Shown here in pieces: positions 24,411-39,823 of a stretch of 64,000 nucleotides of DNA (the stretch's first letter is position 1; each line of letters begins with the position of its first letter). Location of the stretch: IMG/VR virus record IMGVR_UViG_3300049793_000366, positions 186,001 to 250,000 of that record. One strand, given 5' to 3'. Both the position numbers and the translations under genes were made by a program. The notes under the pieces are model-generated. The model ran no database searches. It saw nothing but the letters and a program-made list of their open reading frames with translations, and was not told where the DNA came from.

Positions 24411-24866
24411 TTATGATTTAACATACCCAGTATCGGGTATGAGATGTTTTGATTTAGCGGCAGTTGTCGCTAATACATCACACCTATTATTCTCTACATT
24501 ACTTGCGTGTCCTTTAACCCAAACAAACTTAACATTATGTTGTTTGTATATGACTAAGAAGCGTTTCCAAAGGTCTGGATTTTTTACACCAGTGAAGTTC
24601 TTTTTTATCCATCCACCAATCCAGTTCTTCTCAACAGAATCAACTACATATTTAGAGTCGGAATAAACTGTTACGTTGTGACCACCTGGCTTTAAACATT
24701 CCAGTGCCGCTATCACTGATAGCAACTCCATTCTATTATTTGTTGTATATGTGAATCCCTGTGATAATTCTTTACGCTTATCACCTGAGATAAGAACTGC
24801 ACCATAGCCGCCTGGACCCGGATTTCCGCGTGATGAACCATCTGTATAAATTGTAACTTCTGCCAT
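24411..24866 (-). CDS. rnhA: Ribonuclease HI
   Basis: YTDGSSRGNPGPGGYG, TTNNRMEL, SDSKY, KNPDLW, WVKGH, NNRCD. Confidence 0.97.
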   Translation of the reverse strand: MAEVTIYTDGSSRGNPGPGGYGAVLISGDKRKELSQGFTYTTNNRMELLSVIAALECLKPGGHNVTVYSDSKYVVDSVEKNWIGGWIKKNFTGVKNPDLWKRFLVIYKQHNVKFVWVKGHASNVENNRCDVLATTAAKSKHLIPDTGYVKS

Positions 24867-24867
24867 T

Positions 24868-25755
24868 TTATTCGTCTATTGAGTTTTTTACTTTCCAGGC
24901 TTCGTATGTATTTAATATCAATCCTGATATAGTCATTGGACCAATACCACCTGGGACTGGTGTTATCCATGAGCATTTTTTAGAAACATTTTCGAAATCA
25001 ACATCACCAACAATTTTATCATCTACTTTGTTTATACCAACATCGATTATAATTGCACCATCTTTAATCATATCTGTTGTTAGAAATTTTGGTTTCCCAA
25101 CTGCTACGATAACAATATCTGCTCTTTTGGTTTCTTCGATTAAAAGCTCTCTGGGTGTGTTTATGTCACATGATGTAACAGTTGAACGTCCAATGTTAAA
25201 GTCGTTACCTAACATTATAGAAACAGGTTTACCGACTATATTAGAACGACCAATAACAACAACGTGTCTACCTTTTGTTTCAATTTGATAGTATTGAAGT
25301 AATTTTAAGATACCATATGCTGTAGCTGGTCTCATAGAACGTTGACCCATAGCCATCTTACCGAAGTTAAGAGGGTGAAATCCATCGATGTCTTTATTTG
25401 GATCTATTTCATTGATAATAGAATCAGCCGTTATGTGAATAGGTAAGGGTAATTGTACAATGAATCCATCAATAGAATGATTACTATTCAGTTTACGAAT
25501 TTCATTTAGTAACTCAATCTTAGTAATAGACTCATCGAATCTAATAAGCTGTGATTTTATATTTGCTTTCTCACACGCTTTTAATTTAGCCTTAACATAT
25601 GATTCACTCGCTGGATTATTACCAATTAACACAACAGCCATGCTAGGTGTTGTAGAAGTTAATCTATCACCTAATTGATTATTGTGAAATTCTATTTTAG
25701 CTTTCACCTCACTTATTAAATGATGCGAAACCGATTTACCATCTAGTAGATTCAT
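24868..25755 (-). CDS. folD: Methylene-THF dehydrogenase/cyclohydrolase
   Basis: SYVKAK, DGFIVQLPLP, KDIDGFHP, PATAYGI, VVIGRSNIVGKP, IIDVGIN, TPVPGGIGPMT. Confidence 0.97.
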   Translation of the reverse strand: MNLLDGKSVSHHLISEVKAKIEFHNNQLGDRLTSTTPSMAVVLIGNNPASESYVKAKLKACEKANIKSQLIRFDESITKIELLNEIRKLNSNHSIDGFIVQLPLPIHITADSIINEIDPNKDIDGFHPLNFGKMAMGQRSMRPATAYGILKLLQYYQIETKGRHVVVIGRSNIVGKPVSIMLGNDFNIGRSTVTSCDINTPRELLIEETKRADIVIVAVGKPKFLTTDMIKDGAIIIDVGINKVDDKIVGDVDFENVSKKCSWITPVPGGIGPMTISGLILNTYEAWKVKNSIDE

Positions 25756-26390
25756 TGGTCTAATTTATCCTTTAATTCTCTTAACTTATTTTCAAATATT
25801 AATTCATCGCGAGAGTTTGTGATACTGGATGCTACTAATAAATAGTCAGCTAATCCATTGTAGGATGCTATGTTATCAATAGATACACCAGAAGCAATTG
25901 CCATTGGATGATTACCTAAGAAAGAACGCAACTGTTGTATCTTAACTACTGTAGCCGCTTTACCTGTACCGGGACCGCTTGTTGTTGAAACATCAGTGGA
26001 TAGAATTGAATCTTTACACGCAGTTTCTAAATCAGTTGGTTGTGGTTGATATTTGAATGCTAATCCACCAAAGAATTGACCTCTGAATTCACGAATTGTA
26101 CTCGCTTCATATGGTGTAATACTTGAATCACACCATAAAGCATCAATTGGTATATCAAGTGCTAAAGCATCCATCGTAGATTTTCCTAATAGATTGACAC
26201 CGACCCAAATTTTATATTCTGATTTGATGTCTATTGCATTCTGAATAAGTCTCTCATGTACATCGGTTAGAGAGCTATTGTGGTCTATTAGAAATACTTT
26301 CTTTATACCACAAGATAAACAGGTCTCGATATTAATCTTAACCTGTTCGTCTGTTAGTTTATGTATTACTGGTATGATTTCAGTTTTCAT
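25752..26390 (-). CDS. BtpA/SgcQ-family TIM-barrel protein
   Basis: GVNLL, ALWCD, TTSGPGTG, IASGVS..N...Y...AD..LVASSI. Confidence 0.7.
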   Translation of the reverse strand: MKTEIIPVIHKLTDEQVKINIETCLSCGIKKVFLIDHNSSLTDVHERLIQNAIDIKSEYKIWVGVNLLGKSTMDALALDIPIDALWCDSSITPYEASTIREFRGQFFGGLAFKYQPQPTDLETACKDSILSTDVSTTSGPGTGKAATVVKIQQLRSFLGNHPMAIASGVSIDNIASYNGLADYLLVASSITNSRDELIFENKLRELKDKLDQ

Positions 26391-26559
26391 TCAATAAGAT
26401 ATTTAATGCGGTTTCTCTATTTTGCTTTGTTATGATTTCGTGTATTTGTTCTGTTGAACCACCTACATTATACCACTCTGATATTTGTTGACCCCAACCA
26501 TGCCTATCGGATTCATCCTTTATATAGACACTAAAGTTGGAAATGGTAGTTCTAATCAC
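26380..26559 (-). CDS. 59-aa hypothetical protein with C-terminal RE tag (below the ORF-track cutoff)
   Basis: GTG 26559 overlaps the upstream TAG; VIRTTISNFSVYIKDESDRHGWGQQISEWYNVGGSTEQIHEIITKQNRETALNILLNEN*; fills the gap in the operon. Confidence 0.6.
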   Translation of the reverse strand: MIRTTISNFSVYIKDESDRHGWGQQISEWYNVGGSTEQIHEIITKQNRETALNILLNEN

Positions 26560-26894
26560 TATCGAATAACTGTTTCGATATTCATGTCACGAATTTCTTC
26601 TTGTGTCATTGCTTTGTAGCGAGTCTCTTTGAACTCAAACGGAGCCGCGAAAGAAACTTTATCGAATTCAGAAGAATCGTGTGATGAATAATAACCTTCC
26701 ATTAAAACAAAAAGGTTTTCTTCCGGGAAAGAAAATGCAATGTTCCATTCATTACCGTCACCGTAGTGTTGGTCATAAACAACCTCGTGTTTGTTTTCCA
26801 TTTCATCATTTGAACCTTCATAATAAAGGTCTCTGAAAAATGATACGTTGTTCTTTTTAATCTTCTCGATTAGTTCTTGTCTTGTAAATTTCAT
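26559..26894 (-). CDS. Hypothetical protein with C-terminal RD tag
   Basis: GYYSSHD motif; ends EIRDMNIETVIR. Confidence 0.6.
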   Translation of the reverse strand: MKFTRQELIEKIKKNNVSFFRDLYYEGSNDEMENKHEVVYDQHYGDGNEWNIAFSFPEENLFVLMEGYYSSHDSSEFDKVSFAAPFEFKETRYKAMTQEEIRDMNIETVIR

Positions 26895-27576
26895 AATAGT
26901 TGTTTTTTGTTATCCAGAATTTCTTATTCCAGTTTGTTATTATATAATCTGCTAACCATATTGGGTGTAGCCGTGTTACTAAATCCATTTGTGCTTTGTG
27001 ATATGCTTGTCGATATGGTAGTTTATCACAATATCTCTCTACTGCTAATACATATGACTCTTCAAAGCACACAGCATCTTTTAATGATTCGCTTAATGCG
27101 TTGAATTTATCTTCACTTGGTACAACCCCATCCACTATATTTAAATATGCTGGTGTTGGATTAAATATTTTATGAAGGTCGTCATGTGGAATTTCCCTCT
27201 TCACATTATCATCAAAGAACTTATTCTCTTCTATTTCAAAATTAGTCCTTTGTTTACTGGTGTGTACAGATTTCCAATACTCTCTTAGTTCATTTAAAAA
27301 ACTTTTCTCAATTTCACATCCTTTTATTTGAAAGAAGCGAATGTCTGACATTGTTTTTGCCCACTGAATGTCGTAGATAGCGTGTGACACCTTGAGTGTA
27401 TAGAGTTCATTAGCAGTCATTTCCCTATTTGGCGCACATGGTATGTAATAGTACTCTTCTTGTCTATTCGATTTCTTTAATTCCGATTGGTCATTAGTTA
27501 CCCAGTCGAAATCTTTTGGATTTCTAAATTCAGGAAAAATCTTCTTAGTTAATTGTGAGCCAAATGGGTATAGCAT
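26857..27576 (-). CDS. Phage nucleotidyltransferase-like protein
   Basis: FGS...PKDFDW (GS/DxD), LYTLKVSH, FFDD.V.R...HDDLH. Confidence 0.55.
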   Translation of the reverse strand: MLYPFGSQLTKKIFPEFRNPKDFDWVTNDQSELKKSNRQEEYYYIPCAPNREMTANELYTLKVSHAIYDIQWAKTMSDIRFFQIKGCEIEKSFLNELREYWKSVHTSKQRTNFEIEENKFFDDNVKREIPHDDLHKIFNPTPAYLNIVDGVVPSEDKFNALSESLKDAVCFEESYVLAVERYCDKLPYRQAYHKAQMDLVTRLHPIWLADYIITNWNKKFWITKNNYYEIYKTRTNRED

Positions 27577-27577
27577 A

Positions 27578-28741
27578 TTAATTCATTATCTTTACAAGGC
27601 CCTCTTCTCTATCATCCGATTTAATATCAGCCTTTATTCCGATAAGAAGTTCATTATCATCATCTTCATACTCCATGATTTTGTCAACAATAACTCCGCG
27701 ATATACCTTAAGTATGTCGTAGTGAAGTTTGTGGTCTTGGTCTTGGCTTCCGTAATTGGATGGGCAATATTTAGCATTTAGCCTTGATACGGTGCAGTTA
27801 AATCTTGCAAAGTCTGCTAATAGTTTACTGTCTAATTCGTCTACAACTTCGCCTAAGTTTCTGCTGTAATCACAAGTTTGTTTACCATCAAGTAATGCTT
27901 TAGATAACCAGCTACCGATTGTATCTTGTCCTTTGTAGGACTCTCTTCCACCACCGAATAGGCTAAGTTTAACTCTGAATGCTTTTTCAGTATCATCACC
28001 AGCTTCTTCTATTTCTTTTTTATGGTCAAGACGTAGTTGTTTACTTAATTGAACAGCTAAATCTAACTGACAAGTCTCTTTGTCTTCCTGTGTTAAGTTT
28101 GATTTATATGTACCCTTAGATACTGTCGTTAATGCTTCTTCCAATTGTGATGGATGATAGACACTTTGGTTTCTATCCTCTTTCCCGTTCTTCATCAGAT
28201 GCGACCATGTACCATCTGAGTGTACTTCATATTCAGTTGGTATTGTTGAGTTTCGCCAAATTTGTTTGAATCTTTCGTCACCACTTTCTTCATCTTGTTT
28301 AACAAAGCCCATCTTCTCTAACCAATATGGTGTGATGTAAGATTCGGTGTACGAATTTATTTTTCTACTGCTCATAAAGTCATAAACTTTTCTATGCTCT
28401 AAGCCGAATGTGAAGTCTTTATATACTGCTTTCAGTTTACCATCACTACCACGACCAACTGCTGAGTCGTCAATTATCTCAATGATACTATCGATTTTAT
28501 CACCAAAGAATTTTTCAATGAATTTTGTTGCTGGGTTATTAACAACATTTTCAATTCTACCATAATCATCATAGTCTCCGAATATTGGTAAAAATGCTGG
28601 CTCAAACCAGTCGGTTGAGTACGTGACTCCACCTAATTTTGAATCGCTGTATTTCGATTTCTTCATGAATACAAGCACAGTTGCGTCACCTGCGTGAATT
28701 GGTAATCCGGATATAAATCCGATTTTGTTAAAACATCCCAT
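27578..28741 (-). CDS. Hypothetical protein with C-terminal RE tag
   Basis: LPIFGDYDDYG motif; ends DDREEGLVKIMN. Confidence 0.6.
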   Translation of the reverse strand: MGCFNKIGFISGLPIHAGDATVLVFMKKSKYSDSKLGGVTYSTDWFEPAFLPIFGDYDDYGRIENVVNNPATKFIEKFFGDKIDSIIEIIDDSAVGRGSDGKLKAVYKDFTFGLEHRKVYDFMSSRKINSYTESYITPYWLEKMGFVKQDEESGDERFKQIWRNSTIPTEYEVHSDGTWSHLMKNGKEDRNQSVYHPSQLEEALTTVSKGTYKSNLTQEDKETCQLDLAVQLSKQLRLDHKKEIEEAGDDTEKAFRVKLSLFGGGRESYKGQDTIGSWLSKALLDGKQTCDYSRNLGEVVDELDSKLLADFARFNCTVSRLNAKYCPSNYGSQDQDHKLHYDILKVYRGVIVDKIMEYEDDDNELLIGIKADIKSDDREEGLVKIMN

Positions 28742-28750
28742 ATATTTATT

Positions 28751-29050
28751 TTAGTTATTGATTTTCTTTTTTAAGTCTACGAGTTCTAAGATTTTTATAC
28801 GATTTAACTTATTTAGCTTTTTCTCTAAAATGTTTACTTCGGTTATATCTAAAATTCTTTCTTGAGCAGCTTCAATCCACATATTCATGTATCTCGCTTT
28901 AGTACCTTCGCGCTCAGATAATCCGGCTATAACGCTTTTATATTTTTCCACACGAGAAGAAAGTTCAGCAATGATTTGTTCATTGGTGAACTTGGTGAAG
29001 TCTACCTTTAATTTGGTGTCCACCATTGATTTTATCCTATCAATTGTCAT
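28751..29050 (-). CDS. Hypothetical protein (start revised to ATG 29050)
   Basis: The listed start 29101 lies inside the promoter; MTIDRIK... is in the same frame. Confidence 0.55.
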   Translation of the reverse strand: MTIDRIKSMVDTKLKVDFTKFTNEQIIAELSSRVEKYKSVIAGLSEREGTKARYMNMWIEAAQERILDITEVNILEKKLNKLNRIKILELVDLKKKINN

Positions 29051-29072
29051 TAAGAGTCCGGTATAATTTGTA

Positions 29073-29103
29073 CAAATATAATAAAAAATGGACAAAAGCA
29101 CAA
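29073..29103 (-). promoter_or_regulatory. Bacteroidota sigmaA-type promoter (TTG-N20-TATATTTG)
   Basis: Minus strand gTTG tgcttttGTCCattttttat TATATTTG; heads the 29050-24411 gene run. Confidence 0.7.
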
Positions 29104-29150
29104 CTAAAGAACATTTATTTTTATAAATATCTTAAATATAATGAATTAAT

Positions 29151-31040
29151 ATGAATGAATTAAAAGAGGGAGATGTTATTGTAGGACAAATTGACTTCAA
29201 TACCAACGGTAACGCTTATCTCAGCGTGGATGGACACGATGATGTGTACATCTATAAAAAGAACACTTTAAATGCTCTACACTTAGATACGGTTGAGGTT
29301 CAACTACTTATGAGAGAGGGTAAACTAGAAGGTGTTGTTAAAGAAGTAGTAGGTAGATTTAAAACTGAATGGGTTGGAACCGTTCAACGAAATAAGAATC
29401 TGGTATTTGTTTTACCAGATAGCAATAAAACCCCCGTAGACTTCTTCATTCCAGAAGATGCATCAATGGGTGCTAAAGATAAACAAAAGGTCGTGGTGAG
29501 ACTTATTAAGTGGAAAAAAGGCACTAAATCACCATTTGCTAAGATTATTAAAATTTTAGGTGAAGTAGGTGATAATAACACCGAAATGAATGCGATTATG
29601 TATGAGTATGGCTTGCCTGTTGAATTTCCGAAAGAAGTTGAATTAGAAGCTGAATTGATATCATTTGAAATTCCACCTACTGAGATTGCTAAACGTAGAG
29701 ACATGAGAAGTGTTACTACATTTACAATAGATCCGGTAGATGCGAGAGATTTTGATGATGCATTATCAGTTGAGGTTAAAGAAGACCATGTTGAAATTGG
29801 TGTTCACATCGCTGATGTAACTCACTATGTTAAACCAGGTACTAAATTAGAAGAAGAAGCAATTAAAAGAGCTACTTCTGTTTACTTGGTTGATAGATGT
29901 GTTCCGATGTTACCTGAGAGATTATCGAATGGTGTTTGTTCACTAAGACCACATGAAGAAAAATTGTGTTACTCTGTTATCTTTAAAATGGATTCAGAAG
30001 GTAATGTGTTAGATACATGGTATGGTCGTACTATAATCTATTCTGATAGAAGATTTAGTTATGAAGAAGCACAAGAAATAATTGAAGGCAAGGCTGGTGA
30101 TTTTTCTGATGAATTAACATTGTTCAATACTCTTGCTAAGAAAATCAGAGGACGTAGAATTAAAAGTGGTTCATTGGAAATGGATTCAGCAGAAGTGCGA
30201 TTTAGATTAGATGAACGCGGTAAACCACTTGATGTGTATTTTAAAATACAAAAGGATGCTAATAAATTAATTGAAGAGTTTATGTTGTTAGCTAATCAAG
30301 CAGTTGCTAAGATATTATCTGATAACTCATATAATTCAGTTTATAGAGTTCACGATAAACCAAGCCAAGAAAAATTAGAGGCACTTACTGGTGTTGCTAC
30401 TAACTTTGGTTATAAAGTTAATTTATATCAACCAGAGAAAATAAAAGAATCATTGAATAGTTTATTGGCCGAAATTAAAGGTAAACCAGAAGAGAATATG
30501 ATTTCTACTTTGGTTACAAGGTCAATGGCTAAAGCAACATATACAATTAAAAATATTGGGCATTATGGATTAGGCTTTACTCACTATTCACATTTCACAT
30601 CACCTATTAGACGATATCCTGATATGATGTCTCATAGATTACTTGATGATTATTTAACAAAGAAACCTAAGGGAAATCCTACTGTTGTTGAACAACAAGC
30701 TAAGTGGTCTTCTGAGAGAGAATTAATTGCGGCTAAAGCACAACGAGATTCTATTAAATATAAACAAGCTGAATATTTACAAGATAAAATTGGTAAAGTT
30801 TTCAAAGGTGTTGTATCTGGTGTTACTGATTGGGGAATGTATGTTGAGATAATTGAAAACAAATGTGAGGGTATGATTCGCTTTAAAGATATTGGTGATG
30901 ATATATTCATACCAGATGTAAACGCATATCAAGTTGTAGGTCATAAGACTGGTCAAATCATAAGATTGGGTGATGAGATAATGGTCAGTGTAGCTGGTGT
31001 TAATCTTGAAAAGAAGTCGATAGATTTAAAAGTATTCTAA
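29151..31040 (+). CDS. rnr: Ribonuclease R
   Basis: CSD domains; TIDPVDARDFDDALS (catalytic Asp); VHIADV; LIEEFMLLAN; HFTSPIRRYPD; C-terminal S1 domain. Confidence 0.95.
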   Translation: MNELKEGDVIVGQIDFNTNGNAYLSVDGHDDVYIYKKNTLNALHLDTVEVQLLMREGKLEGVVKEVVGRFKTEWVGTVQRNKNLVFVLPDSNKTPVDFFIPEDASMGAKDKQKVVVRLIKWKKGTKSPFAKIIKILGEVGDNNTEMNAIMYEYGLPVEFPKEVELEAELISFEIPPTEIAKRRDMRSVTTFTIDPVDARDFDDALSVEVKEDHVEIGVHIADVTHYVKPGTKLEEEAIKRATSVYLVDRCVPMLPERLSNGVCSLRPHEEKLCYSVIFKMDSEGNVLDTWYGRTIIYSDRRFSYEEAQEIIEGKAGDFSDELTLFNTLAKKIRGRRIKSGSLEMDSAEVRFRLDERGKPLDVYFKIQKDANKLIEEFMLLANQAVAKILSDNSYNSVYRVHDKPSQEKLEALTGVATNFGYKVNLYQPEKIKESLNSLLAEIKGKPEENMISTLVTRSMAKATYTIKNIGHYGLGFTHYSHFTSPIRRYPDMMSHRLLDDYLTKKPKGNPTVVEQQAKWSSERELIAAKAQRDSIKYKQAEYLQDKIGKVFKGVVSGVTDWGMYVEIIENKCEGMIRFKDIGDDIFIPDVNAYQVVGHKTGQIIRLGDEIMVSVAGVNLEKKSIDLKVF

Positions 31041-31041
31041 T

Positions 31042-31074
31042 AAAAAAAGTCTCAAATTAATTTGAGACTTTTTT
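31042..31074. terminator. Bidirectional Rho-independent terminator
   Basis: aaaaaaagtctcaaa-ttaa-tttgagactttttt. Confidence 0.85.
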
Positions 31075-31076
31075 GT

Positions 31077-32042
31077 TTATTGTATAATAATTTTCTTGAC
31101 TTCTATTGTTCTATCTGTGTATTCTATATGTTGAATATACATACCTGGTTTTGTGTCAGTAGTTTCAACACCAGTTAAGTCATATGTAGTTATCAATTTA
31201 ACAACTTTTTGTGATTGATTGTCAATAGATATAATACCAGAATATTCGTATTGACCATTGAAGTCAGTTTGTTTAAGTCTATAATAATTTATAGCATCTT
31301 TAATGAACATATAATCTTTGAATGTATAACTCAATAAAGTAGTTGATGTACCAGCACCATCTATGTTTGCTACTTTCTCCCAGTTAATACCATCACTACT
31401 TCTTTCTATTGTATAGAAGTCATTATTCATTTCGGTTGCTGTTTTCCAAGATAGTAAATTATGCGAATTATAATTGAAGCCATCGAATGATAATAACTCA
31501 ATTGGTAGTGGGTTAGAACAATTTATAACGAAGTTATCAAAGTCATAGAAATATACTGCTGTTCCTGGAGGTCCCGGAGGTCCTGTGACATAGCTGTTTA
31601 TTGTAGCATTTGTTATTAAACAAAATCTAAATTGTATAATGTTATTAGGTAAACCAGAGTAAGTATGCGTAACGCTATTGTATAATCCGGTGTATGTATC
31701 TAATGTAGTCCAGGTCGAACCGTTTGTAGTGTATTGAAAGTATAAAAAATCAAATCCATTCTGTATGATACCATTGTGTAGAAAGGTTACGGAAAGACCA
31801 CTGATGCAGTTTGTCATATTTAAAACAGGACTAACCATAGTAACAGTTGCGCTATTTGGGTATGGTGTTGTGCCTATATTTGTTGTAAGCCAAGAGCTAC
31901 CACCATATACTTGAATTCCCGCACCATTTGTAACAGACCAGCCGCCTAATCCTGTAAAATTATATGTTGTTGGATAAGATATTTGGCTAAATCCAACTAA
32001 GCTAATTAAGGATATGAATAAAGTTATTATAAATCTTTTCAT
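31077..32042 (-). CDS. Secreted beta-sandwich protein with Bacteroidota Ig-like module and T9SS-type C-terminal domain
   Basis: Sec signal MKRFIITLFISLISLVGFSQ; PLPIELLSF...W.TATE.NND.Y.IERS.DG..W...GAGTS...Y.F.D...YYRLKQTDFNG; C-terminal YDLTG...PGMYI...KKIII. Confidence 0.8.
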   Translation of the reverse strand: MKRFIITLFISLISLVGFSQISYPTTYNFTGLGGWSVTNGAGIQVYGGSSWLTTNIGTTPYPNSATVTMVSPVLNMTNCISGLSVTFLHNGIIQNGFDFLYFQYTTNGSTWTTLDTYTGLYNSVTHTYSGLPNNIIQFRFCLITNATINSYVTGPPGPPGTAVYFYDFDNFVINCSNPLPIELLSFDGFNYNSHNLLSWKTATEMNNDFYTIERSSDGINWEKVANIDGAGTSTTLLSYTFKDYMFIKDAINYYRLKQTDFNGQYEYSGIISIDNQSQKVVKLITTYDLTGVETTDTKPGMYIQHIEYTDRTIEVKKIIIQ

Positions 32043-32046
32043 ATCC

Positions 32047-32055
32047 TATATATTA
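32047..32055 (-). promoter_or_regulatory. Putative late promoter TAATATATA
   Basis: Exact motif 4 nt upstream of ATG 32042. Confidence 0.55.
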
Positions 32056-32307
32056 GGATAGTAGCTTGTCTATATTCTCTTTTCTTTTTTCCATTTTGAT
32101 TTGTTCTGCTGTCTTTTTCGGTGGTTCTGAATTTAGCGTTACATCACTCATATATTCTCGTATGAAGTCTATGTAATAGTCTCTATCATTATAGCCTTCC
32201 TCTTCATCATCTGTTCTACTGAATGGGTCATAAATCATATCTTTCCACGTATTTTTCTTCTTTCCGTTGAACTTATCAAATAAGTTGTTAAAATGCTTAT
32301 CGTTCAT
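32053..32307 (-). CDS. Hypothetical protein with C-terminal RD-like tag
   Basis: 84 aa; ends KRKENIDKLLS. Confidence 0.6.
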   Translation of the reverse strand: MNDKHFNNLFDKFNGKKKNTWKDMIYDPFSRTDDEEEGYNDRDYYIDFIREYMSDVTLNSEPPKKTAEQIKMEKRKENIDKLLS

Positions 32308-32333
32308 AGCTTTTGTTTTATTAAATTCTATTG

Positions 32334-32341
32334 CAAATATA
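32334..32341 (-). promoter_or_regulatory. Bacteroidota -7 element TATATTTG (no clear -33)
   Basis: Upstream of ATG 32307; GGAC at 32361-32364 sits where the -33 element would be. Confidence 0.5.
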
Positions 32342-32372
32342 TGGATAAGTTTTTAATTCCGGACTTGGGTTT

Positions 32373-32381
32373 TAATATATA
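32373..32381 (+). promoter_or_regulatory. Putative late promoter TAATATATA
   Basis: Exact motif upstream of ATG 32404. Confidence 0.6.
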
Positions 32382-32403
32382 TGTCAATAAATAAAGGATA
32401 ACT

Positions 32404-32994
32404 ATGAGAATTAAGAATTTTAGTGAATTTTCAATCAACGAGGATGCTGAACCGTTTAACGATTCGCCAGAAACATATATTGATATAGCTTTAACTAAGT
32501 TGAAGAAGAAGATTGATGGTATGTTTGAAGCTGAAGCTGAGGGTGAAGAGAGCGAAGGTGATGATGAAAAACCAGTGGTTACTGAAAAGACACCAGAGCA
32601 AGCAAGAGAAGATAAGAAGAAATCTGATGAAACTTCTTTTACTGAGTTGGGTCTTAAACTTGAGTCGTCTGAGATTAGTAAATACTCTAAATTATATGAT
32701 TCATTGACTGTAAAATTCTCTGATGAGAAGTATTTATATCACCTTTATGTTATGATGAAATTAGAAGATGCTATATCTAAAGAGCCTGGTACTGAGATTG
32801 AACAATCTGGTGTAGATGAGGCTTACATAGTATTCAAGAAATATGATATACAATCATTGGAAATTGTTGGTCAGCTTAGTAAAAATATCAAAACAAGCGA
32901 AATCACACAAGATTATATTGTTGACTTAAAACTTGAAGTTGATGAGGCGTTTGGTGATGCTGATGAAGAAGAATTTAAGATAGAGACCGAATAA
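32404..32994 (+). CDS. Acidic hypothetical protein with capsid-targeting-like N-terminus
   Basis: MRIKNFSEFSINED. Confidence 0.6.
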   Translation: MRIKNFSEFSINEDAEPFNDSPETYIDIALTKLKKKIDGMFEAEAEGEESEGDDEKPVVTEKTPEQAREDKKKSDETSFTELGLKLESSEISKYSKLYDSLTVKFSDEKYLYHLYVMMKLEDAISKEPGTEIEQSGVDEAYIVFKKYDIQSLEIVGQLSKNIKTSEITQDYIVDLKLEVDEAFGDADEEEFKIETE

Positions 32995-33407
32995 TGAAAC
33001 ACATCAAGCGTTTTGAAAATATCGACAGTAAAGATTACTCAAGAATAGAATCTAGGAATTACGTCACTTGTGAGGAATGTTCTGGTACAGGTGATGCTCC
33101 TGTTGATGGTTCTTGCGAGAATTGTTATGGTAAAGGTCGATATGCTGTTATGCTTGATGATAAAGAAGTAGTAGATTTTAAAAGAAATGAGAGGCTTTTT
33201 AATGAGCTTAAATTGGAATTAAATCCACCACGATATACTGAATTTTGTGTAATAGATGGTGTCTATACGCAAGAGTTCATGGTTAAGATTATTTCTGCTG
33301 AGAGTCTATCGATGTTACCAAAATACATTAGTATTGGTTTAGATATCTATGTTGTACCAGATATGGGTGGAGTTAAAATTAATGTTTCCCGTGATATGGA
33401 TAAGTAA
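32994..33407 (+). CDS. DnaJ-type zinc-finger protein with capsid-targeting-like N-terminus
   Basis: MKHIKRFEN; CEECSGTG...CENCYGKG. Confidence 0.65.
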   Translation: MKHIKRFENIDSKDYSRIESRNYVTCEECSGTGDAPVDGSCENCYGKGRYAVMLDDKEVVDFKRNERLFNELKLELNPPRYTEFCVIDGVYTQEFMVKIISAESLSMLPKYISIGLDIYVVPDMGGVKINVSRDMDK

Positions 33408-33425
33408 TTTATTACTATATAATCC

Positions 33426-33941
33426 ATGTTTAATTTCGTAGCAAGCCAAAGAACCATTTCAAAGATAAAGCAGGGTTCAAAATACTTTACACCATACTTA
33501 GGTATGGCTTTCACTACTGAGGATAAAGACGGTAGAAAATTCAGAATAAATGATAAAGAAAAATTTGCAAAAGATTACTTTGAAAAGAGTGGTCGAATGG
33601 CGTATTCACAGGGTAAAATTGGTAGCATAAATTTCTTTGTTGACCACTATATTACTGATAGTTTAGTTCTTTGTTATTATAATGATGAAGAAGTAGCTTT
33701 TGAATATTTAGACCACACAGCTAAAGAAAAGGGAGTAGATGCTTATCTTGGATCTATGATAAAGAAAGTAGAATCTATTTACGCAGAAGAAGTTACTTCA
33801 AAGAAAGAGAATATGACCGAGAGAGATATTAATCAAATGCCTGGTGATGCGAGTAAGTTATATACAAATCCTGGTCAAGTTACATATGACGATATTAAGA
33901 AGTATATGCAACAAAAGAAAAATGGTGGAACTAAACCTTAG
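33426..33941 (+). CDS. Hypothetical protein
   Basis: 171 aa ORF. Confidence 0.6.
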   Translation: MFNFVASQRTISKIKQGSKYFTPYLGMAFTTEDKDGRKFRINDKEKFAKDYFEKSGRMAYSQGKIGSINFFVDHYITDSLVLCYYNDEEVAFEYLDHTAKEKGVDAYLGSMIKKVESIYAEEVTSKKENMTERDINQMPGDASKLYTNPGQVTYDDIKKYMQQKKNGGTKP

Positions 33942-35014
33942 TCAAATATTTCGGCACCAGCATATTTGTTCTGAACAAACAAGAATGATACACCAGTTGA
34001 TTTAAAAAGGTCTTCACCTAAATCCATGATATCTTCATCATCATTGTCATAATACCATCTAACTTTTGGTAATGTACATTTTTTGAGAAGTTTTATTATA
34101 TCCAAAACATATTTTTCTGAACCACTACTGATGAAATCTAAAGAGATATCTAATGTTAGGTTCTGTGGGTTTGTATCGCAATACTCTTTGAACCACTCAT
34201 AGATTGGTTTCCAGAATTGGTCAGCGTGAGAAGGATATGTGCGACCCTTAATTAAGAAGGTCTTCGTGCCTACATCAAACTTAATCTCTGGTGTGTAACC
34301 AGTGCTTGGTATAAATAATGACTTAAGTTTTTTATCAGTTGTTCTGTCTTCAATTTCACACGTTATACGCATTGATGAATTAATCAAACCATAATCTCTT
34401 GTTTTGTTCCCTTTAGAATCAAATATCTTAAAGTTTACGTATTGATTGTCTGCTACTAATACATTACCGGAAACAGCTTCTTTCCATCTTTCTAAATCGA
34501 AAGTGTGTACTTTCAAAATATTTAATGATGCGATGATAGTGATGTTTCTTTTAGCACATAGCGAATTGAAGAATTCAATCTGTGCTTGTAATCTATCTTC
34601 GAATCCTTTGAATGTTGGACCCAGTATGGTGAATAAGTTTATGGTATCAATGAATAAAAATTCAACATTACCAAGCAATTCTACATCAAACCCAAGAGTC
34701 ATATCATCTAATCCCTTAGAGTTAAACACTATGTTGATTGGGTCTGGTATATCGTAGATGCCAGTTATAACACCAGCCTTTATATCGTTCAGTGGTTTAT
34801 TTTCCAATACCGCGTAAATACGCTTTCTCATATATTCATCACTCGAATCGAGTCCGTAGTAGATAATATTCTTTTCGTCTTTTACTGCTTTAGCGGCAAT
34901 GTTAGCAAGTACGGTTGTCTTACCCGATTGATAGTGGGAAGCAACTATATTAAATTTACCTTCAACTATATTGAAGTTATGCGTTTCTTCTGTAAGAATT
35001 AAGTCTCTACTCAT
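33938..35014 (-). CDS. Fusion of a DnaB/RecA-type P-loop ATPase domain and a SiaC/DUF1987 domain
   Basis: ASHYQSGKTT (Walker A), FLFID (Walker B); C-terminal TPEIKF...IKGRTYP...FWKPIYEW...LDFISSGSEK...WYYDNDDEDIMDLGED. Confidence 0.75.
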   Translation of the reverse strand: MSRDLILTEETHNFNIVEGKFNIVASHYQSGKTTVLANIAAKAVKDEKNIIYYGLDSSDEYMRKRIYAVLENKPLNDIKAGVITGIYDIPDPINIVFNSKGLDDMTLGFDVELLGNVEFLFIDTINLFTILGPTFKGFEDRLQAQIEFFNSLCAKRNITIIASLNILKVHTFDLERWKEAVSGNVLVADNQYVNFKIFDSKGNKTRDYGLINSSMRITCEIEDRTTDKKLKSLFIPSTGYTPEIKFDVGTKTFLIKGRTYPSHADQFWKPIYEWFKEYCDTNPQNLTLDISLDFISSGSEKYVLDIIKLLKKCTLPKVRWYYDNDDEDIMDLGEDLFKSTGVSFLFVQNKYAGAEIFD

Positions 35015-35463
35015 TAGATAAGATTAAAAAGGTCAAGGTGTAAATGAAAATGGTTCAAAACTAAAATCATCAATATTGCTGATTTTATTGTTAGATAAAT
35101 GTATGAGATATATTTGTTTAGGTCGTTACATTTCTTGTTTAGTATTTTACCGATTATGTTTTGTATTATCTGTACAAAAAATGCAAAAATAAATAGCATA
35201 GCAAATACTTTCCAACTACCTGATATTAAACCCAATATACACCAGATTAATTCTGATAGTGCTATAAATCCAGTGAACATACCAGCGTTGTAATCGTCAC
35301 TTGTTCTATAATCTGCTTTTTTGGGAGAGCGTTTGTTTATTTTCTTAAAGGCTTCTGCCCATTCTGCTACCTTCCAAGTCTTGTGGTGATTGAAAAGATT
35401 GATTAAATCCAATAGGAATATGAATAATCCGATAGCGTAAAATATGTGTCCAAGTGTCTGCAT
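35014..35463 (-). CDS. Hypothetical multi-pass membrane protein
   Basis: Four hydrophobic segments. Confidence 0.65.
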   Translation of the reverse strand: MQTLGHIFYAIGLFIFLLDLINLFNHHKTWKVAEWAEAFKKINKRSPKKADYRTSDDYNAGMFTGFIALSELIWCILGLISGSWKVFAMLFIFAFFVQIIQNIIGKILNKKCNDLNKYISYIYLTIKSAILMILVLNHFHLHLDLFNLI

Positions 35464-35512
35464 TATAATTGTTTTATCTCATTATATAAAATGAGAGTTT
35501 ATAGTTTACATA

Positions 35513-35544
35513 CAAATATATGGACTTTTTTACTAAACGCCAAA
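35513..35544 (-). promoter_or_regulatory. Bacteroidota sigmaA-type promoter (TTTG-N20-TATATTTG)
   Basis: Minus strand TTTG gcgtttagtaaaaaaGTCCa TATATTTG. Confidence 0.75.
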
Positions 35545-35577
35545 TATTTGTCCAAAATCATATAGGAGTTCAGTTTT

Positions 35578-35586
35578 TAATATATA
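35578..35586 (+). promoter_or_regulatory. Putative late promoter TAATATATA
   Basis: Exact motif upstream of ATG 35609. Confidence 0.6.
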
Positions 35587-35608
35587 GAAACAAATCTAAC
35601 TAACAGCT

Positions 35609-38320
35609 ATGGCAGTGACCCCATTATATAAAGCATTAAAGTCAAATGGTACATCATTCTATGCTTTTCCTGGTGCAGCAGAAGATATTTCAGCAGCATA
35701 TCAGAACGAAAATTATAGGATGTATTTCTCAAAATTTGTTCTTCTTAATTTCCCTAAACAGAATTTAAATCCAGGAACGATGTCAAACCCAGTACAATGG
35801 GATTTTGAGAATAGCTTTGTTAAGTCCAACTTATCGGTTGCTTCTGACTACGCTGACCAGTTAGTTGAATCTCTTAGAAACTACGTTGCTAACCATGAGG
35901 TTACAATCAGAGATTCGAAGTTAAATAATACTGAATTTTTCTATGATAATAATCAATTATCAACAACGACTGAGAAGATTTTTTGGAAATGGTGTACTAA
36001 ATTAAATGTACTTGACTTAGAAAGAGCAGTACCAGGTGATGAGTACTTTGATAATTTACAAGAATTTGAAGCTAATAATATTGCGGATGATACATACTTC
36101 CCTGAGATACTATGGCGCGAGAGAGAGGTTATTGATTTTAGACCAGTTTATTTTTATCAAACTGGATATGGTACTTATTCATTAGGTCAGTTTTTAGAGA
36201 TTGAGTTTCAAGGTTCTACTAACTTTAGAGATGGTGATAAAATAGTATTTAGTGATATTTCAAACTCATCTCTTATTGTAGATGGTGTTTATGATGGATT
36301 CCAAGTTGATATTTTAAAAGTACTTCCAGCAGGTGCTACCGCTGGTGATAAAATAATTGTTGATTTAGTTTATACATCATCAACTGAGATTGAAACGATT
36401 GGTACTGCTAAGATAGTTTATAGTAGATTAGTTCAGTATATCGGTGAAGTAAATGGTATAAATAACGTACAAGAAGCTAATCGCTCTTATACAGAGGTTT
36501 ATGCTCACATCCCGGATCACACTGGTAAAACACCGGATATTTTATTTAGAACAAAAGTTGATGTTAACTATAAGCCGAATATGATTTATCCGATATTACC
36601 ATCTCAATTTCAACCTGAGATTATCGGAGCAGAAAACTTCAACTCTCCTATTGTTAATACGCCACAGAATTATCCAGGTGACTTCTACGGTCAGTTTGAT
36701 ACAGATGATTTCACATATGAAACATCTTCTGGTGACTCTCTTAGAAGAAGCGGTGATTACTTTGGTGTACAGGGTGATTTAAATGCGCCTATTTATAGCC
36801 CATCTACTTTAGATGGTTTATGTGTTGACTTTGATAGAACACATTACGTTAAGATGAATGTTATTGACAGAGAACTTAATACGTTCGATGAATTCAATGC
36901 TCTTAGTGTAAATGGTCAACCACCAGAAGATTTCGAATTTAATGCTATTCTTTGGTACTACACTGTTGAAGATGCTGTTAAGGGTGGTATTACTACAAAT
37001 ATGTATGGTATTACATTCTTAAATCATCCTAAACAAAATGTTGCTTATGAAGATGATAAACCATTAGTTAGAATAAAGTTACCTTCTTACAAGAAGTTAG
37101 TTGCTAATGATGGACAAGATGGTACATCATACGCATTCAGTTTGAATTTGAACTTCAATATCATAAATGATAATCCACAAGATACGTATAATCCGACTGC
37201 TATAAATTCGTTATTTAGTATGAATTTATTCAACGAGGCTATGAAGAGATTGGCTGAGTCTAATGATTCATTCATGAAGCTTAATGCTAATTATACTGGT
37301 GTAGTTGAGGATATTGATGGTTTAAGAGGTTTGTTATATACACAAACTGATTTTGCTACAATCAATTCGAGAATGTCTTTCTTAGAATCTCTATTGAATG
37401 CTTATCAATCAATGCAGTTACAAAGCTCTGATACTATTGAGGTTCAAACGAATTTATCAACATCACCGCCTTTGGTTCAGTTGATGTCTAAGGATGCAAC
37501 TTACTATAAAATTGAAAAAGTTAATACAACTGATTTATATAATACATCAGGTATAATACCTTTAAATATCAATGTACCAACTAATAAGAATTTCTTAGTT
37601 AATATTATTAACAATGACCAAACACAATTCACACTTGCGTCAAACACAAGATTAACAGTTGTTTTGGATAGAGATTTAGATTATAGACAATCAGTTGATA
37701 TCGTTATTACTGCTGATGACTTCGCAACACAAAATAAAGAATTGGATATTTATATCAAGTTTTATGATGGTTCACCAAACGGCTTACCTGTTGAGACACC
37801 ATTGATTACTAAAGTTAATTTACCAGTTTTCTATAACCAGTCTACTCAAGATTTATCAATTTCTAAGAAGTGGGACCAGACTATAATTTACCCAGTATTG
37901 GATGATGTAGCAAGACCTATATTAATCAATTCTGATGTAACTATGGATATTCCAGTATCGGTTGCTAACCTATCTAATATGGTTAAAGCTGGTGATACAT
38001 TCTTGGTTAATAATTTAATTATTGATCCGATTTCACCGACTGATTATTCTGGACAATATGTGGTTAAGGCTGTGTCATCAACTATGTCAACATCTACAAT
38101 TAAATTAGATATTTCTGATAAAGTTGAATTGGTTCAGTATGGTATATCAACATCTCAAATTACTGGTTATCCAGTTGAGATACATGGTACATCATCAGCA
38201 TTAGCTTCTATGCCTTCTCTTACTTTCAATAAAGGAGTTAAGTATAGAGTTACGAGAGTTGACCAATTTGATGCGTCTTCTTTATCGGCTCGTTATTTAA
38301 TTGAGAAGATTCTAAACTAA
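35609..38320 (+). CDS. Large putative virion structural protein (baseplate/tail)
   Basis: 903 aa, beta-rich, late motif upstream; no enzymatic motifs recognised. Confidence 0.55.
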   Translation: MAVTPLYKALKSNGTSFYAFPGAAEDISAAYQNENYRMYFSKFVLLNFPKQNLNPGTMSNPVQWDFENSFVKSNLSVASDYADQLVESLRNYVANHEVTIRDSKLNNTEFFYDNNQLSTTTEKIFWKWCTKLNVLDLERAVPGDEYFDNLQEFEANNIADDTYFPEILWREREVIDFRPVYFYQTGYGTYSLGQFLEIEFQGSTNFRDGDKIVFSDISNSSLIVDGVYDGFQVDILKVLPAGATAGDKIIVDLVYTSSTEIETIGTAKIVYSRLVQYIGEVNGINNVQEANRSYTEVYAHIPDHTGKTPDILFRTKVDVNYKPNMIYPILPSQFQPEIIGAENFNSPIVNTPQNYPGDFYGQFDTDDFTYETSSGDSLRRSGDYFGVQGDLNAPIYSPSTLDGLCVDFDRTHYVKMNVIDRELNTFDEFNALSVNGQPPEDFEFNAILWYYTVEDAVKGGITTNMYGITFLNHPKQNVAYEDDKPLVRIKLPSYKKLVANDGQDGTSYAFSLNLNFNIINDNPQDTYNPTAINSLFSMNLFNEAMKRLAESNDSFMKLNANYTGVVEDIDGLRGLLYTQTDFATINSRMSFLESLLNAYQSMQLQSSDTIEVQTNLSTSPPLVQLMSKDATYYKIEKVNTTDLYNTSGIIPLNINVPTNKNFLVNIINNDQTQFTLASNTRLTVVLDRDLDYRQSVDIVITADDFATQNKELDIYIKFYDGSPNGLPVETPLITKVNLPVFYNQSTQDLSISKKWDQTIIYPVLDDVARPILINSDVTMDIPVSVANLSNMVKAGDTFLVNNLIIDPISPTDYSGQYVVKAVSSTMSTSTIKLDISDKVELVQYGISTSQITGYPVEIHGTSSALASMPSLTFNKGVKYRVTRVDQFDASSLSARYLIEKILN

Positions 38321-38368
38321 TACGATTAAAATTAGTATTTATATAATAAATTTATTATATTTGTCCTA

Positions 38369-38764
38369 ATGTTATATATCATATTAGTTATAATTTTTGT
38401 CCGTTCGGCATATGTTCTTTATCAGAATTATCGATTTGATAAATTCACTAAGAACGTCAGCGAATTTTTAATTGGTCAGAATTTACATCTTATGCCAAAT
38501 TTATGGAATTCCAAATCTATGAGAATGGATGAGCTTCCATTGCCAAAATTATCAATAGATAATATAAATCTGTGTGATATCATAGTTAAACCAATAGTAT
38601 CGGAAAAAACCAATACAGTAGAAGCGTATATTTTTACTTGGTCTAAGAAACTTACCAACTTTGATATACTTATGGGCTATAACATGACTCATAAGAAGAT
38701 AGATAGTATAAAACTCGATAAGGGAGAAATTCGAGATAAAAACATTGATAGATTACTGCAATGA
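38369..38764 (+). CDS. Hypothetical membrane-anchored protein with C-terminal RD tag
   Basis: N-terminal TM; ends EIRDKNIDRLLQ. Confidence 0.6.
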   Translation: MLYIILVIIFVRSAYVLYQNYRFDKFTKNVSEFLIGQNLHLMPNLWNSKSMRMDELPLPKLSIDNINLCDIIVKPIVSEKTNTVEAYIFTWSKKLTNFDILMGYNMTHKKIDSIKLDKGEIRDKNIDRLLQ

Positions 38765-39821: not shown

Positions 39822-39823
39822 GT

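What the first reader, a model, noticed from the sequence alone, without database searches (positions are those of the whole stretch)
31077..32042. Phage-encoded apparent Type IX secretion cargo
Seen: a Sec signal peptide, a beta-sandwich (MAM/adhesin-like) domain, the PLPIELLSF...YYRLKQTDFNG Ig-like module typical of Bacteroidota secreted proteins, and a terminal YDLTG...PGMYI...KKIII segment resembling a short T9SS C-terminal sorting domain (it lacks the YPNP motif). An exact TAATATATA sits 4 nt upstream. Established: T9SS is Bacteroidota-specific and exports CTD-bearing proteins to the cell surface or medium. Inference: the phage uses the host T9SS late in infection to place an adhesin or decoy on the cell. 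Possible roles are receptor masking, aggregation of host cells, or jamming the T9SS/gliding machinery.
Basis: partly seen in the sequence, partly recalled or inferred. Interest (0 to 1): 0.75.

Follow-up and report, generated by a model that had tools for sequence, protein, structure and literature searches.

The report
Phage secreted protein with half T9SS signal
A giant phage of Bacteroidota encodes a Sec-exported binding protein whose tail is a cut-down version of the host's type IX secretion signal; this cut-down tail is common in phages and rare in bacteria, so it may be a minimal export tag or a viral way to tamper with that secretion system.

Summary
The gene is real: minus strand, 31077..32042, 321 aa.

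- **Signal peptide:** cleavage is predicted at G-F-S|Q20. Gln at +1 is invariant in 20 homologues, matching the Bacteroidota Q-rule.
- **N-terminal domain:** a MAM/galactose-binding-like beta-sandwich.
- **Middle module:** an FN3/Ig-like module that is very abundant and, among the best genome matches, found only in Bacteroidota.
- **Tail:** about 45 aa. It is not a full type A CTD. It scores 15.6 bits on TIGR04183 (cut-off 23), gives no PF18962 match, and forms three strands rather than seven.

The tail keeps the two motifs reported as needed for secretion: the beta3-beta4 loop glycine (G291, invariant) and the beta7 lysine (K317). In a predicted complex, the PorV contacts fall on these motifs (score 0.81, best control 0.13).

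The same module plus short tail ends 79 of 80 viral ORFs. It ends only 11 of 90 bacterial ORFs, where the canonical CTD dominates. It also occurs in chromosomal genes of Fluviicola and Brumimicrobium MAGs that encode PorV.

The same phage carries a second gene with a canonical CTD. Phage-encoded T9SS cargo was reported in 2020.

Verdict: probably T9SS-directed cargo with a new "half-CTD" variant. "Late" expression and the proposed role are unsupported.

The parts
31077..32042 (-). Whole gene, 321 codons plus a TAA stop. A phage accessory protein, predicted to be secreted.
   Evidence: ORF list. Full-length homologues at 35-54% identity; the seven places looked up for five of them were all phage-like contigs. 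A syntenic orthologue lies next to the same RNB gene.
31986..32042 (-). Sec/SPase I signal peptide, residues 1-19. Predicted cleavage is G-F-S|Q20.
   Evidence: Sequence. AF2 helix at residues 2-15. Q20 is invariant and position -1 is G/S/A in 18 of 20. The Bacteroidetes Q-rule is described in PMC5837995.
31518..31985 (-). N-terminal MAM/galactose-binding-like beta-sandwich, residues 20-175, with a conserved Cys pair (C79 and C175).
   Evidence: pLDDT about 90-98. PDB hits: 2c9a MAM-Ig and GH sugar-binding domains. Atlas TM 0.74-0.82 to MAM and InhA-like_MAM domains. InhA-like_MAM reaches E 0.0019 in 2 of 20 family members. C175 is present in 20 of 20 and C79 in 16 of 20.
31221..31511 (-). FN3/Ig-like module PLPIELLSF...YYRLKQTDFNG...IISI, residues 178-274.
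   Evidence: Seven-strand module in both models. PDB hits are FN3 and Ig tandems. 69,935 representatives match the protein, most listed matches falling in this module, which also occurs in tandem arrays. No Pfam or NCBIfam model covers it.
31080..31220 (-). "Half-CTD" tail, residues 275-321. It has three strands (281-287, 300-308, 313-320), the Y-D-L-T-G291 loop, G300 and K316/K317.
   Evidence: TIGR04183 15.6-16.7 bits, profile positions 23/25-72. hhalign against canonical tails gives 94.7% probability, or 75.6% when trimmed, with two deletions. G291 is invariant. The predicted PorV interface uses residues 285-305 and 315-321.
32047..32055 (-). TAATATATA motif, 4 nt upstream of the ATG. Its TAA is the stop codon of the upstream 84-aa ORF.
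32053..32307 (-). Upstream 84-aa ORF with no signal peptide and no family match, possibly co-transcribed. The syntenic contig has a 79-aa ORF in the same position.
31043..31074 (.). A 14-bp hairpin flanked by an A-run and a T-run. It looks like a bidirectional intrinsic terminator shared with the convergent RNase R/II-like gene.

Best explanation
The gene encodes a phage accessory protein made in the infected Bacteroidota cell.

Proposed path:
1. The Sec system exports it.
2. Signal peptidase I cleaves it before Gln20.
3. It folds in the periplasm into a MAM/lectin-like binding domain, probably disulfide-bonded, followed by an FN3-like spacer.
4. Its roughly 45-residue tail hands it to the host type IX secretion system.

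The tail is a deletion derivative of a type A CTD. It keeps one sheet (beta3, beta6, beta7) and the two surface motifs that experiments in P. gingivalis link to secretion: the beta3-beta4 loop glycine and the beta7 lysine at the C-terminus. It has lost the YPNP-bearing beta1-beta2 strands and beta4-beta5.

The most likely outcome is that PorV and the translocon accept this half-CTD, and the binding domain ends up on the cell surface or in the medium.

What is shown: the architecture, homology, conservation and distribution. What is predicted in silico: PorV docking. What is inferred: T9SS-dependent export, the final location and the ligand.
For: - **Signal peptide:** invariant Q at +1 (PMC5837995).
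- **Cys pair:** a conserved pair fits an extracytoplasmic protein.
- **Tail homology:** TIGR04183 partial match to positions 25-72. hhalign of short against canonical tails gives 94.7% probability, E 5.9e-8; tail-only gives 75.6%, E 2.4e-5.
- **Structural alignment:** the C-terminal unit aligns end to end with the extreme C-termini of proteins named T9SS type A sorting proteins, at E 1e-12 to 1e-10 and TM 0.63-0.72. Atlas TM is 0.75-0.84.
- **Functional motifs:** G291 is invariant and K317 is K/R in 16 of 20. These match the essential G699 loop and the conserved beta7 lysine of RgpB (PMC11285876). A conserved C-terminal lysine that contacts PorV is also reported in PMC10994853.
- **Precedent for a short signal:** the HBP35 signal was mapped to the last 22 residues (PMC11285876).
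- **Predicted complex:** with PorV from a Fluviicola MAG the score is 0.81 in three runs, against a best control of 0.13. Under the tool's mark, 51 of 78 solved complexes passed and 2 of 108 mismatched pairs did. The contacts lie only in the tail: residues 285, 287-296, 298-301, 303, 305, 315, 317, 319 and 321.
- **Bacterial use:** the same unit ends large adhesin-like chromosomal proteins in MAGs. The two MAGs tested for PorV have it.
- **Same phage:** it carries a canonical CTD gene scoring 45.8 bits.
- **Family members:** P0010 and P0013 have longer (77-78 aa after the motif), canonical-looking CTD tails that lack a YPNP motif, and 3 of the 20 members match PF18962, best E 1.4e-4.
Against: - The tail is below the cut-off of both curated CTD models. 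Only 4 of 81 short-tail units reach E<=1 on TIGR04183.
- It has three strands, not a 3+4 sandwich.
- No solved CTD appears in the top 50 PDB Foldseek hits.
- Published work stresses that an intact CTD fold matters for secretion (PMC11285876).
- The complex score is the model's own confidence. It may simply reflect likeness to solved CTD-PorV complexes.
- PorV came from a MAG chosen as a plausible host relative, not from the true host, which is unknown.
- There is no expression or localisation data.
Confidence: 0.5

Rival explanations
1. Periplasmic protein with a dead CTD remnant. The protein crosses only the inner membrane. The tail is an evolutionary leftover, or just a structural cap for the FN3 module. 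The protein acts in the periplasm or at the inner face of the outer membrane, for example by binding a glycan or protein there.
For: The tail fails TIGR04183 and PF18962. One whole sheet of the sandwich is missing. Experiments show that disturbing CTD integrity blocks export (PMC11285876).
Against: A leftover would not keep an invariant loop glycine and a C-terminal lysine across hundreds of viral and bacterial proteins. It would also not always sit at the extreme C-terminus, nor be predicted to bind PorV through exactly those residues.
Confidence: 0.22
2. Viral decoy that occupies PorV or the translocon. The half-CTD binds PorV but cannot complete transport or be processed by PorU. It therefore slows secretion of host cargo, including gliding adhesins and phage receptors. 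The result would be superinfection exclusion or immobilisation of the host.
For: The short tail dominates in viral contigs (79 of 80 ORFs). It is a minority in bacterial genomes (11 of 90) under the same search. It keeps the predicted PorV-contact motifs while lacking the other sheet. The same phage uses a full CTD on another gene, so the short form is not forced by the host.
Against: The same unit ends at least 12 chromosomal genes in three Bacteroidota MAGs, five of them clustered in one MAG. That would be self-harm if it blocked secretion. The N-terminal domains of the viral proteins are highly varied binding modules. That suggests the passenger matters, not just the tail.
Confidence: 0.13
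3. Virion-associated Ig-like decoration or adhesion protein. The FN3/Ig and lectin-like domains decorate the capsid or tail, as in other phages.
For: BFVD hits include FN3-bearing minor tail and structural proteins at weak E-values. Ig-like domains are common on virions (general knowledge).
Against: A cleavable signal peptide with the Q-rule and a conserved Cys pair point to export away from cytoplasmic assembly. The neighbours are RNase R/II, FolD and RNase H genes, not structural genes. The closest cellular relatives are T9SS cargo.
Confidence: 0.05

Closest known systems
Type A T9SS cargo of Bacteroidota (TIGR04183/PF18962 proteins, e.g. RgpB, HBP35, RemA-type adhesins)
   Same: Sec signal peptide with Gln at +1. 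Passenger binding domain, then an Ig/FN3-like domain, then a C-terminal targeting element. The tail shares the beta3-loop glycine, the G-x-Y-type beta6 and a beta7 lysine. It aligns to the C-terminal part of canonical CTDs.
   Different: The tail is about 45 aa rather than 67-88. It has no YPNP beta1-beta2 and no beta4-beta5, giving three strands instead of a 3+4 sandwich. It falls below both curated cut-offs. It is encoded by a phage.
Phage-encoded T9SS cargo of 'Cryophage' (Bellas et al. 2020, PMC7468147)
   Same: A phage of a Bacteroidota-type host encodes secreted proteins with T9SS sorting signals. The genes vary between related phages.
   Different: The Cryophage genes are enzymes or a PA14 protein annotated with type A sorting domains. 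This gene has a binding-only passenger and a truncated signal. The canonical type is represented in this phage by a different, 190-aa gene.
HBP35 CTD of P. gingivalis, the shortest characterised CTD
   Same: It is a precedent that a short C-terminal piece carries the targeting information. The structure spans 59 residues and the signal was mapped to the last 22 residues (PMC11285876).
   Different: HBP35 still forms the full seven-strand fold. No sequence similarity to it was tested here.
MAM / InhA-like MAM / cleaved-adhesin beta-sandwich domains
   Same: The N-terminal domain has the same jelly-roll fold. Such domains are common passengers of T9SS cargo.
   Different: The query itself has no significant Pfam match; only 2 of 20 relatives reach E 0.0019. 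The ligand is unknown.

Membership tests
T9SS type A C-terminal sorting domain (TIGR04183 / PF18962) | Profile score at or above the curated cut-off | tested here: not met
   TIGR04183 gives 15.6-16.7 bits against a cut-off of 23. PF18962 gives no match at E<=0.1 in the genome scan, against a cut-off of 27. Only 4 of 81 short-tail units reach E<=1.
T9SS type A C-terminal sorting domain (TIGR04183 / PF18962) | Seven-stranded 3+4 Ig-like beta-sandwich | tested here: not met
   AF2 models at pLDDT 85-93 show only three strands after the FN3 module. hhalign shows deletions of about 24 and 15 residues. The fold definition comes from PMC11285876.
T9SS type A C-terminal sorting domain (TIGR04183 / PF18962) | Conserved beta3-beta4 loop glycine and a conserved lysine in the last strand, at the extreme C-terminus | tested here: met
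   G291 is present in 20 of 20. K317 is K/R in 16 of 20. A Lys lies in the last 10 residues in 47 of 50 short tails. The motifs are described in PMC11285876 and PMC10994853.
T9SS type A C-terminal sorting domain (TIGR04183 / PF18962) | N-terminal Sec signal peptide on the same protein | tested here: met
T9SS type A C-terminal sorting domain (TIGR04183 / PF18962) | Binding to the PorV shuttle or translocon | tested here: inconclusive
   The predicted complex scores 0.81 against a best control of 0.13; 51 of 78 solved complexes and 2 of 108 mismatched pairs reach the tool's mark. The contacts lie in the tail only. This is in silico, and the PorV is from a surrogate host.
T9SS type A C-terminal sorting domain (TIGR04183 / PF18962) | Secretion that depends on T9SS genes, and CTD removal by PorU | not testable with these tools
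   Needs expression in wild-type and T9SS-mutant Bacteroidota.
Phage-encoded T9SS cargo (as in PMC7468147) | The gene lies on a phage genome whose host has a T9SS | tested here: met
   Terminase present. IMG/VR record. Syntenic phage contig. A canonical CTD gene in the same genome scores 45.8 bits. The module is confined to Bacteroidota among the 80 best genome loci. The host itself is not identified.
MAM / InhA-like_MAM domain (PF00629 / PF20773) | Profile match above threshold | tested here: not met
   No match for the query. Two of 20 relatives reach E 0.0019, below threshold.
MAM / InhA-like_MAM domain (PF00629 / PF20773) | Jelly-roll beta-sandwich fold superposable on MAM-type domains | tested here: met
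   2c9a MAM-Ig at rank 2, E 5.8e-7. Atlas TM 0.74-0.82 to clusters carrying MAM or InhA-like_MAM.

The most novel reading that the evidence does not exclude
The virus-enriched half-CTD is not an export tag but a PorV/translocon-binding decoy. Phages of Bacteroidota would use it to throttle the host type IX secretion and gliding apparatus, for example to remove T9SS-dependent receptors and exclude superinfecting phages. Alternatively, it could park a variable binding domain permanently on PorV at the cell surface.
Probability: 0.13. Interest if true: 0.85.

Novelty: new variant of a known kind. Interest (0 to 1): 0.62.

Why it matters
If the 45-residue tail is enough for export, it is a natural minimal T9SS signal, roughly half the size of known CTDs. 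It would show which sheet of the CTD the PorV-SprA pocket really reads. It would also give a compact secretion tag.

If it binds but does not pass, it would be, as far as the literature searched here shows, the first viral inhibitor or hijacker of the T9SS.

Either way, hundreds of phage contigs carry signal-peptide proteins with varied lectin-like, CUB or MAM-type heads on this same FN3-plus-short-tail stalk. These include contigs of 140-353 kb and this genome of at least 0.5 Mb. This points to a widespread and unstudied way for Bacteroidota phages to remodel the surface of infected cells.

Tried and rejected
- **Pfam, NCBIfam and PHROGs on the protein:** only sub-threshold hits.
- **Profile of the family against PDB sequences:** nothing at E<=1.
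- **PDB Foldseek on the C-terminal unit:** generic FN3/Ig tandems, no CTD structure in the top 50.
- **BLASTP of the tail against the phage's own canonical CTD protein:** not significant, E 0.24.
- **"Short tail is phage-specific":** rejected. Three MAGs carry it in housekeeping or T9SS gene contexts.
- **"Motif marks late genes":** could not be tested. Ten motif-preceded genes gave no structural annotation, only a SAM-lyase-like gene and a methyltransferase.
- **RNA evidence:** no RNA run was listed. The only run holding the locus is a soil metagenome DNA run.
- **Megablast of 15 kb against GenBank phages:** one 259-bp match at 72.7% to a 642-kb uncultured phage.
- **Model coordinates:** not available in the script box. 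Whether the three-strand tail packs on the FN3 module could not be measured.

Full report
**1. The observation**

The minus-strand ORF 31077..32042 encodes 321 aa. The window is bases 186,001-250,000 of a 507,910-bp IMG/VR virus record, estimated 97% complete by CheckV and about 33% GC. The record encodes a large terminase.

- **Signal peptide:** MKRFIITLFISLISLVGFS, followed by Gln20. AF2 models residues 2-15 as a helix. Gln at +1 is invariant in 20 full-length homologues, and position -1 is G/S/A in 18 of 20. This is the Bacteroidetes Q-rule for signal peptidase I substrates (PMC5837995).
- **Upstream motif:** TAATATATA lies at 32047-32055 on the minus strand, 4 nt before the ATG.
- **Downstream hairpin:** a 14-bp hairpin flanked by an A-run and a T-run (31043-31074) separates the gene from the convergent RNase R/II-like gene.

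**2. Anatomy**

An AF2 model built on 84 sequences has mean pLDDT 91.3. It shows three parts.

*(i) Residues about 20-175: a beta-sandwich.*
- The whole-model PDB search puts the MAM-Ig module of RPTPmu (2c9a) at rank 2, beside sugar-binding plus Ig parts of glycoside hydrolases.
- ESM Atlas gives TM 0.74-0.82 to MAM and InhA-like_MAM domains of T9SS-type carboxypeptidases. Feature search also returns cleaved-adhesin clusters.
- Sequence profiles do not reach significance for the query. Two of 20 relatives reach E 0.0019 on InhA-like_MAM.
- A Cys pair is conserved: C175 in 20 of 20 and C79 in 16 of 20. This fits an oxidising compartment.

*(ii) Residues 178-274: an FN3/Ig-like module.*
- An exhaustive search found 69,935 cluster representatives matching the protein at E<=1e-3. 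Most of the listed matches fall in this module, some as arrays with 9-11 matched stretches.
- No Pfam or NCBIfam model covers it.
- All 80 best loci in one-genome-per-species GTDB are Bacteroidota.

*(iii) Residues 275-321: a tail of only three strands* (281-287, 300-308, 313-320).

**3. Is the tail a T9SS CTD?**

By membership, no.
- TIGR04183 scores 15.6-16.7 bits against a cut-off of 23, and covers only profile positions 23/25-72.
- PF18962 does not detect it.
- Of 81 homologous short-tail units, only 4 reach E<=1 on TIGR04183.
- Solved CTDs are seven-stranded sandwiches made of sheets beta4-beta3-beta6-beta7 and beta5-beta2-beta1 (PMC11285876).

By descent, and probably by function, yes.
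- Profile-profile comparison of 50 short tails with 43 canonical tails, each following the same module, gives 94.7% probability and E 5.9e-8.
- After removing the shared module strand, the result is 75.6% and E 2.4e-5.
- The short form equals the canonical CTD minus a block of about 24 residues (the YPNP strands beta1-beta2) and a block of about 15 residues (beta4-beta5).
- The C-terminal unit model (pLDDT 93.6) aligns end to end with the extreme C-termini of AlphaFold DB proteins named T9SS type A sorting proteins, at E 1e-12 to 1e-10 and TM 0.63-0.72. In ESM Atlas the TM is 0.75-0.84.
- What survives is what the literature marks as functional. The beta3-beta4 loop in RgpB is F-D-M-N-G699, where G699R blocks secretion. 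Here it is Y-D-L-T-G291, with G291 invariant.
- The C-terminal strand carries the conserved lysine, here K316/K317, which is K/R in 16 of 20. In translocon structures, this lysine is the only conserved CTD residue that contacts PorV. Otherwise recognition is by shape and hydrophobic fit (PMC10994853).

**4. Predicted PorV docking**

I took PorV from a Fluviicola MAG that itself carries short-tail proteins. PorV there scores 394 bits and lies next to PorU. I folded it with residues 176-321 of the phage protein.
- The score was 0.81 in all three runs. The best control was 0.13.
- Under the tool's mark, 51 of 78 solved complexes and 2 of 108 mismatched pairs passed.
- All confident contacts on the phage protein lie in the tail: residues 285, 287-296, 298-301, 303, 305, 315, 317, 319 and 321. 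These cover the loop motif and the alternate residues of the last strand, including K317.
- This supports likeness to a PorV-binding CTD. It does not show binding, and it may reflect the model's memory of solved complexes.

**5. Distribution**

*Full-length relatives.* They share 35-54% identity. The seven places looked up for five of them were all phage-like contigs.
- One is syntenic, lying next to the same 629-aa RNB gene.
- The others sit beside terminase, sigma factor, homing endonuclease, S21 or Gp88 genes.

*Short-tail proteins with other heads.* The three looked up lie on phage-like contigs. The one canonical-tail relative looked up is chromosomal, next to PorP and a CHU_C protein.

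*Scans of two collections.* I used the same module-based patterns and the same ranking for both.

| Collection | Short tail | Long canonical tail |
|---|---|---|
| IMG/VR, best 80 loci | 79 of 80 complete ORFs | 1 |
| GTDB genomes, best 80 loci | 11 | 79 |

In IMG/VR, 256 stretches were confirmed in total, and most of the ORFs start with a signal peptide ending in Q. The ranking favours short tails in both collections, so the contrast is real. The absolute fractions are not unbiased.

*The short tail is not virus-only.* It ends at least 7 genes in a Fluviicola MAG (five of them clustered), 3 in a Brumimicrobium MAG and 2 in a Flavobacteriia MAG. The three loci examined sit among housekeeping or T9SS genes: acyl-CoA dehydrogenase, AnmK, Obg, and SprB/CHU_C plus PorP. 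Their passengers look adhesin-like: YDG, Big_5, Gly_rich_2 and GBD_T9SS_assoc domains.

*Same phage.* It also encodes a 190-aa protein with a signal peptide and a canonical CTD, at G000:C1:298493-299065. It scores 45.8 bits on TIGR04183 and 45.7-48.8 bits on PF18962. The host therefore very likely has a T9SS.

**6. Interpretation**

The best-supported reading is a Sec-exported binding protein that is directed to the T9SS by a half-CTD.

| Reading | Confidence |
|---|---|
| Extracytoplasmic and Bacteroidota-phage nature of the protein | about 0.85 |
| Export via the T9SS (main explanation) | about 0.5 |
| Periplasmic protein with a non-functional remnant | 0.22 |
| PorV/translocon decoy | 0.13 |
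| Virion decoration protein | 0.05 |

- **Decoy rival:** the viral enrichment and the presence of a full CTD elsewhere in the same phage favour it. The chromosomal bacterial copies and the highly varied passenger domains count against it.
- **"Late in infection":** unsupported. The motif is clearly associated with gene starts. The genome has 117 copies, 96 of them within 40 nt upstream of a start, against 4.7% for random positions.
  - Spacing peaks at 4-5 nt and again at 19-31 nt.
  - 62 of the 96 have no same-strand ORF ending within 60 nt upstream.
- This pattern is promoter-like, and the 4-5 nt class may give leaderless mRNAs. The genes it precedes are mostly unknown, plus a SAM-lyase-like gene and a methyltransferase.
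- No RNA run was listed.

**7. Novelty**

Phage-encoded T9SS cargo has been described once, as a "unique occurrence" (PMC7468147). Viral proteins annotated with the sorting domain also exist in BFVD/UniProt.

What appears new is the truncated tail as a conserved unit, its strong enrichment in phage genomes, and its retention of just the two functional CTD motifs. Five further literature searches with T9SS, CTD and phage terms turned up no description of it.

I file it as a new variant of a known kind.

Noticed in passing
window 32047-32055 and 17 other sites; genome-wide in G000: TAATATATA (extended form TTTAATATATA) is a motif associated with gene starts. The genome has 117 copies, 96 of them within 40 nt upstream of an ATG on the same strand. 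Spacing peaks at 4-5 nt and at 19-31 nt. It looks like a phage promoter element, and the 4-5 nt class may give leaderless mRNAs. The timing class is unknown.
   Followed up: partly
G000:C1:298493-299065 (+), outside the window; L009:1129-1701: A second secreted phage protein of 190 aa carries a canonical T9SS type A CTD (IRVFPNP...). It scores 45.8 bits on TIGR04183. It lies just downstream of a DnaJ-like gene (L009:288-1010).
   Followed up: partly
whole record: The identical protein is recorded on a 711,805-bp contig, while the IMG/VR record is a 507,910-bp "provirus". The trimming may be an artefact, and the phage genome may exceed 0.7 Mb. The only GenBank phage match is a 259-bp stretch at 72.7% to the 642-kb uncultured phage LR756502.1 (query bases 818-1076 of window 25000-40000).
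   Followed up: no
window 29151-31040 (+), 24868-25755 (-), 24411-24866 (-), 33938-35014 (-): The phage encodes an RNase R/II-like exoribonuclease (RNB, 372 bits, with CSD and S1 domains), FolD, RNase H and a protein with a SiaC domain. The same gene order is conserved on a related 30-kb metagenome contig (L002).
   Followed up: partly
window 31221-31511 (module); protein databases: The FN3-like module PLPxELLSF...YYRLKQxDxDG accounts for most of the listed matches among the 69,935 representatives (50%-identity clusters) that hit the protein, and it forms arrays with up to 11 matched stretches. Neither Pfam-A nor NCBIfam recognises it in this protein.
   Followed up: partly
L087 (Fluviicola MAG, G001:C58) and L097: Five large genes ending in the short-tail unit are clustered on one contig of a Fluviicola MAG. 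The same MAG has adjacent porU and porV. This may be a lineage in which the half-CTD is a regular sorting signal, and it is a candidate host clade.
   Followed up: partly
window 14623-15192 (-): A 189-aa protein weakly resembles S-adenosylmethionine lyase (PF23780, E 1e-5, below cut-off). It is preceded by the TAATATATA motif and may be an anti-restriction function.
   Followed up: no
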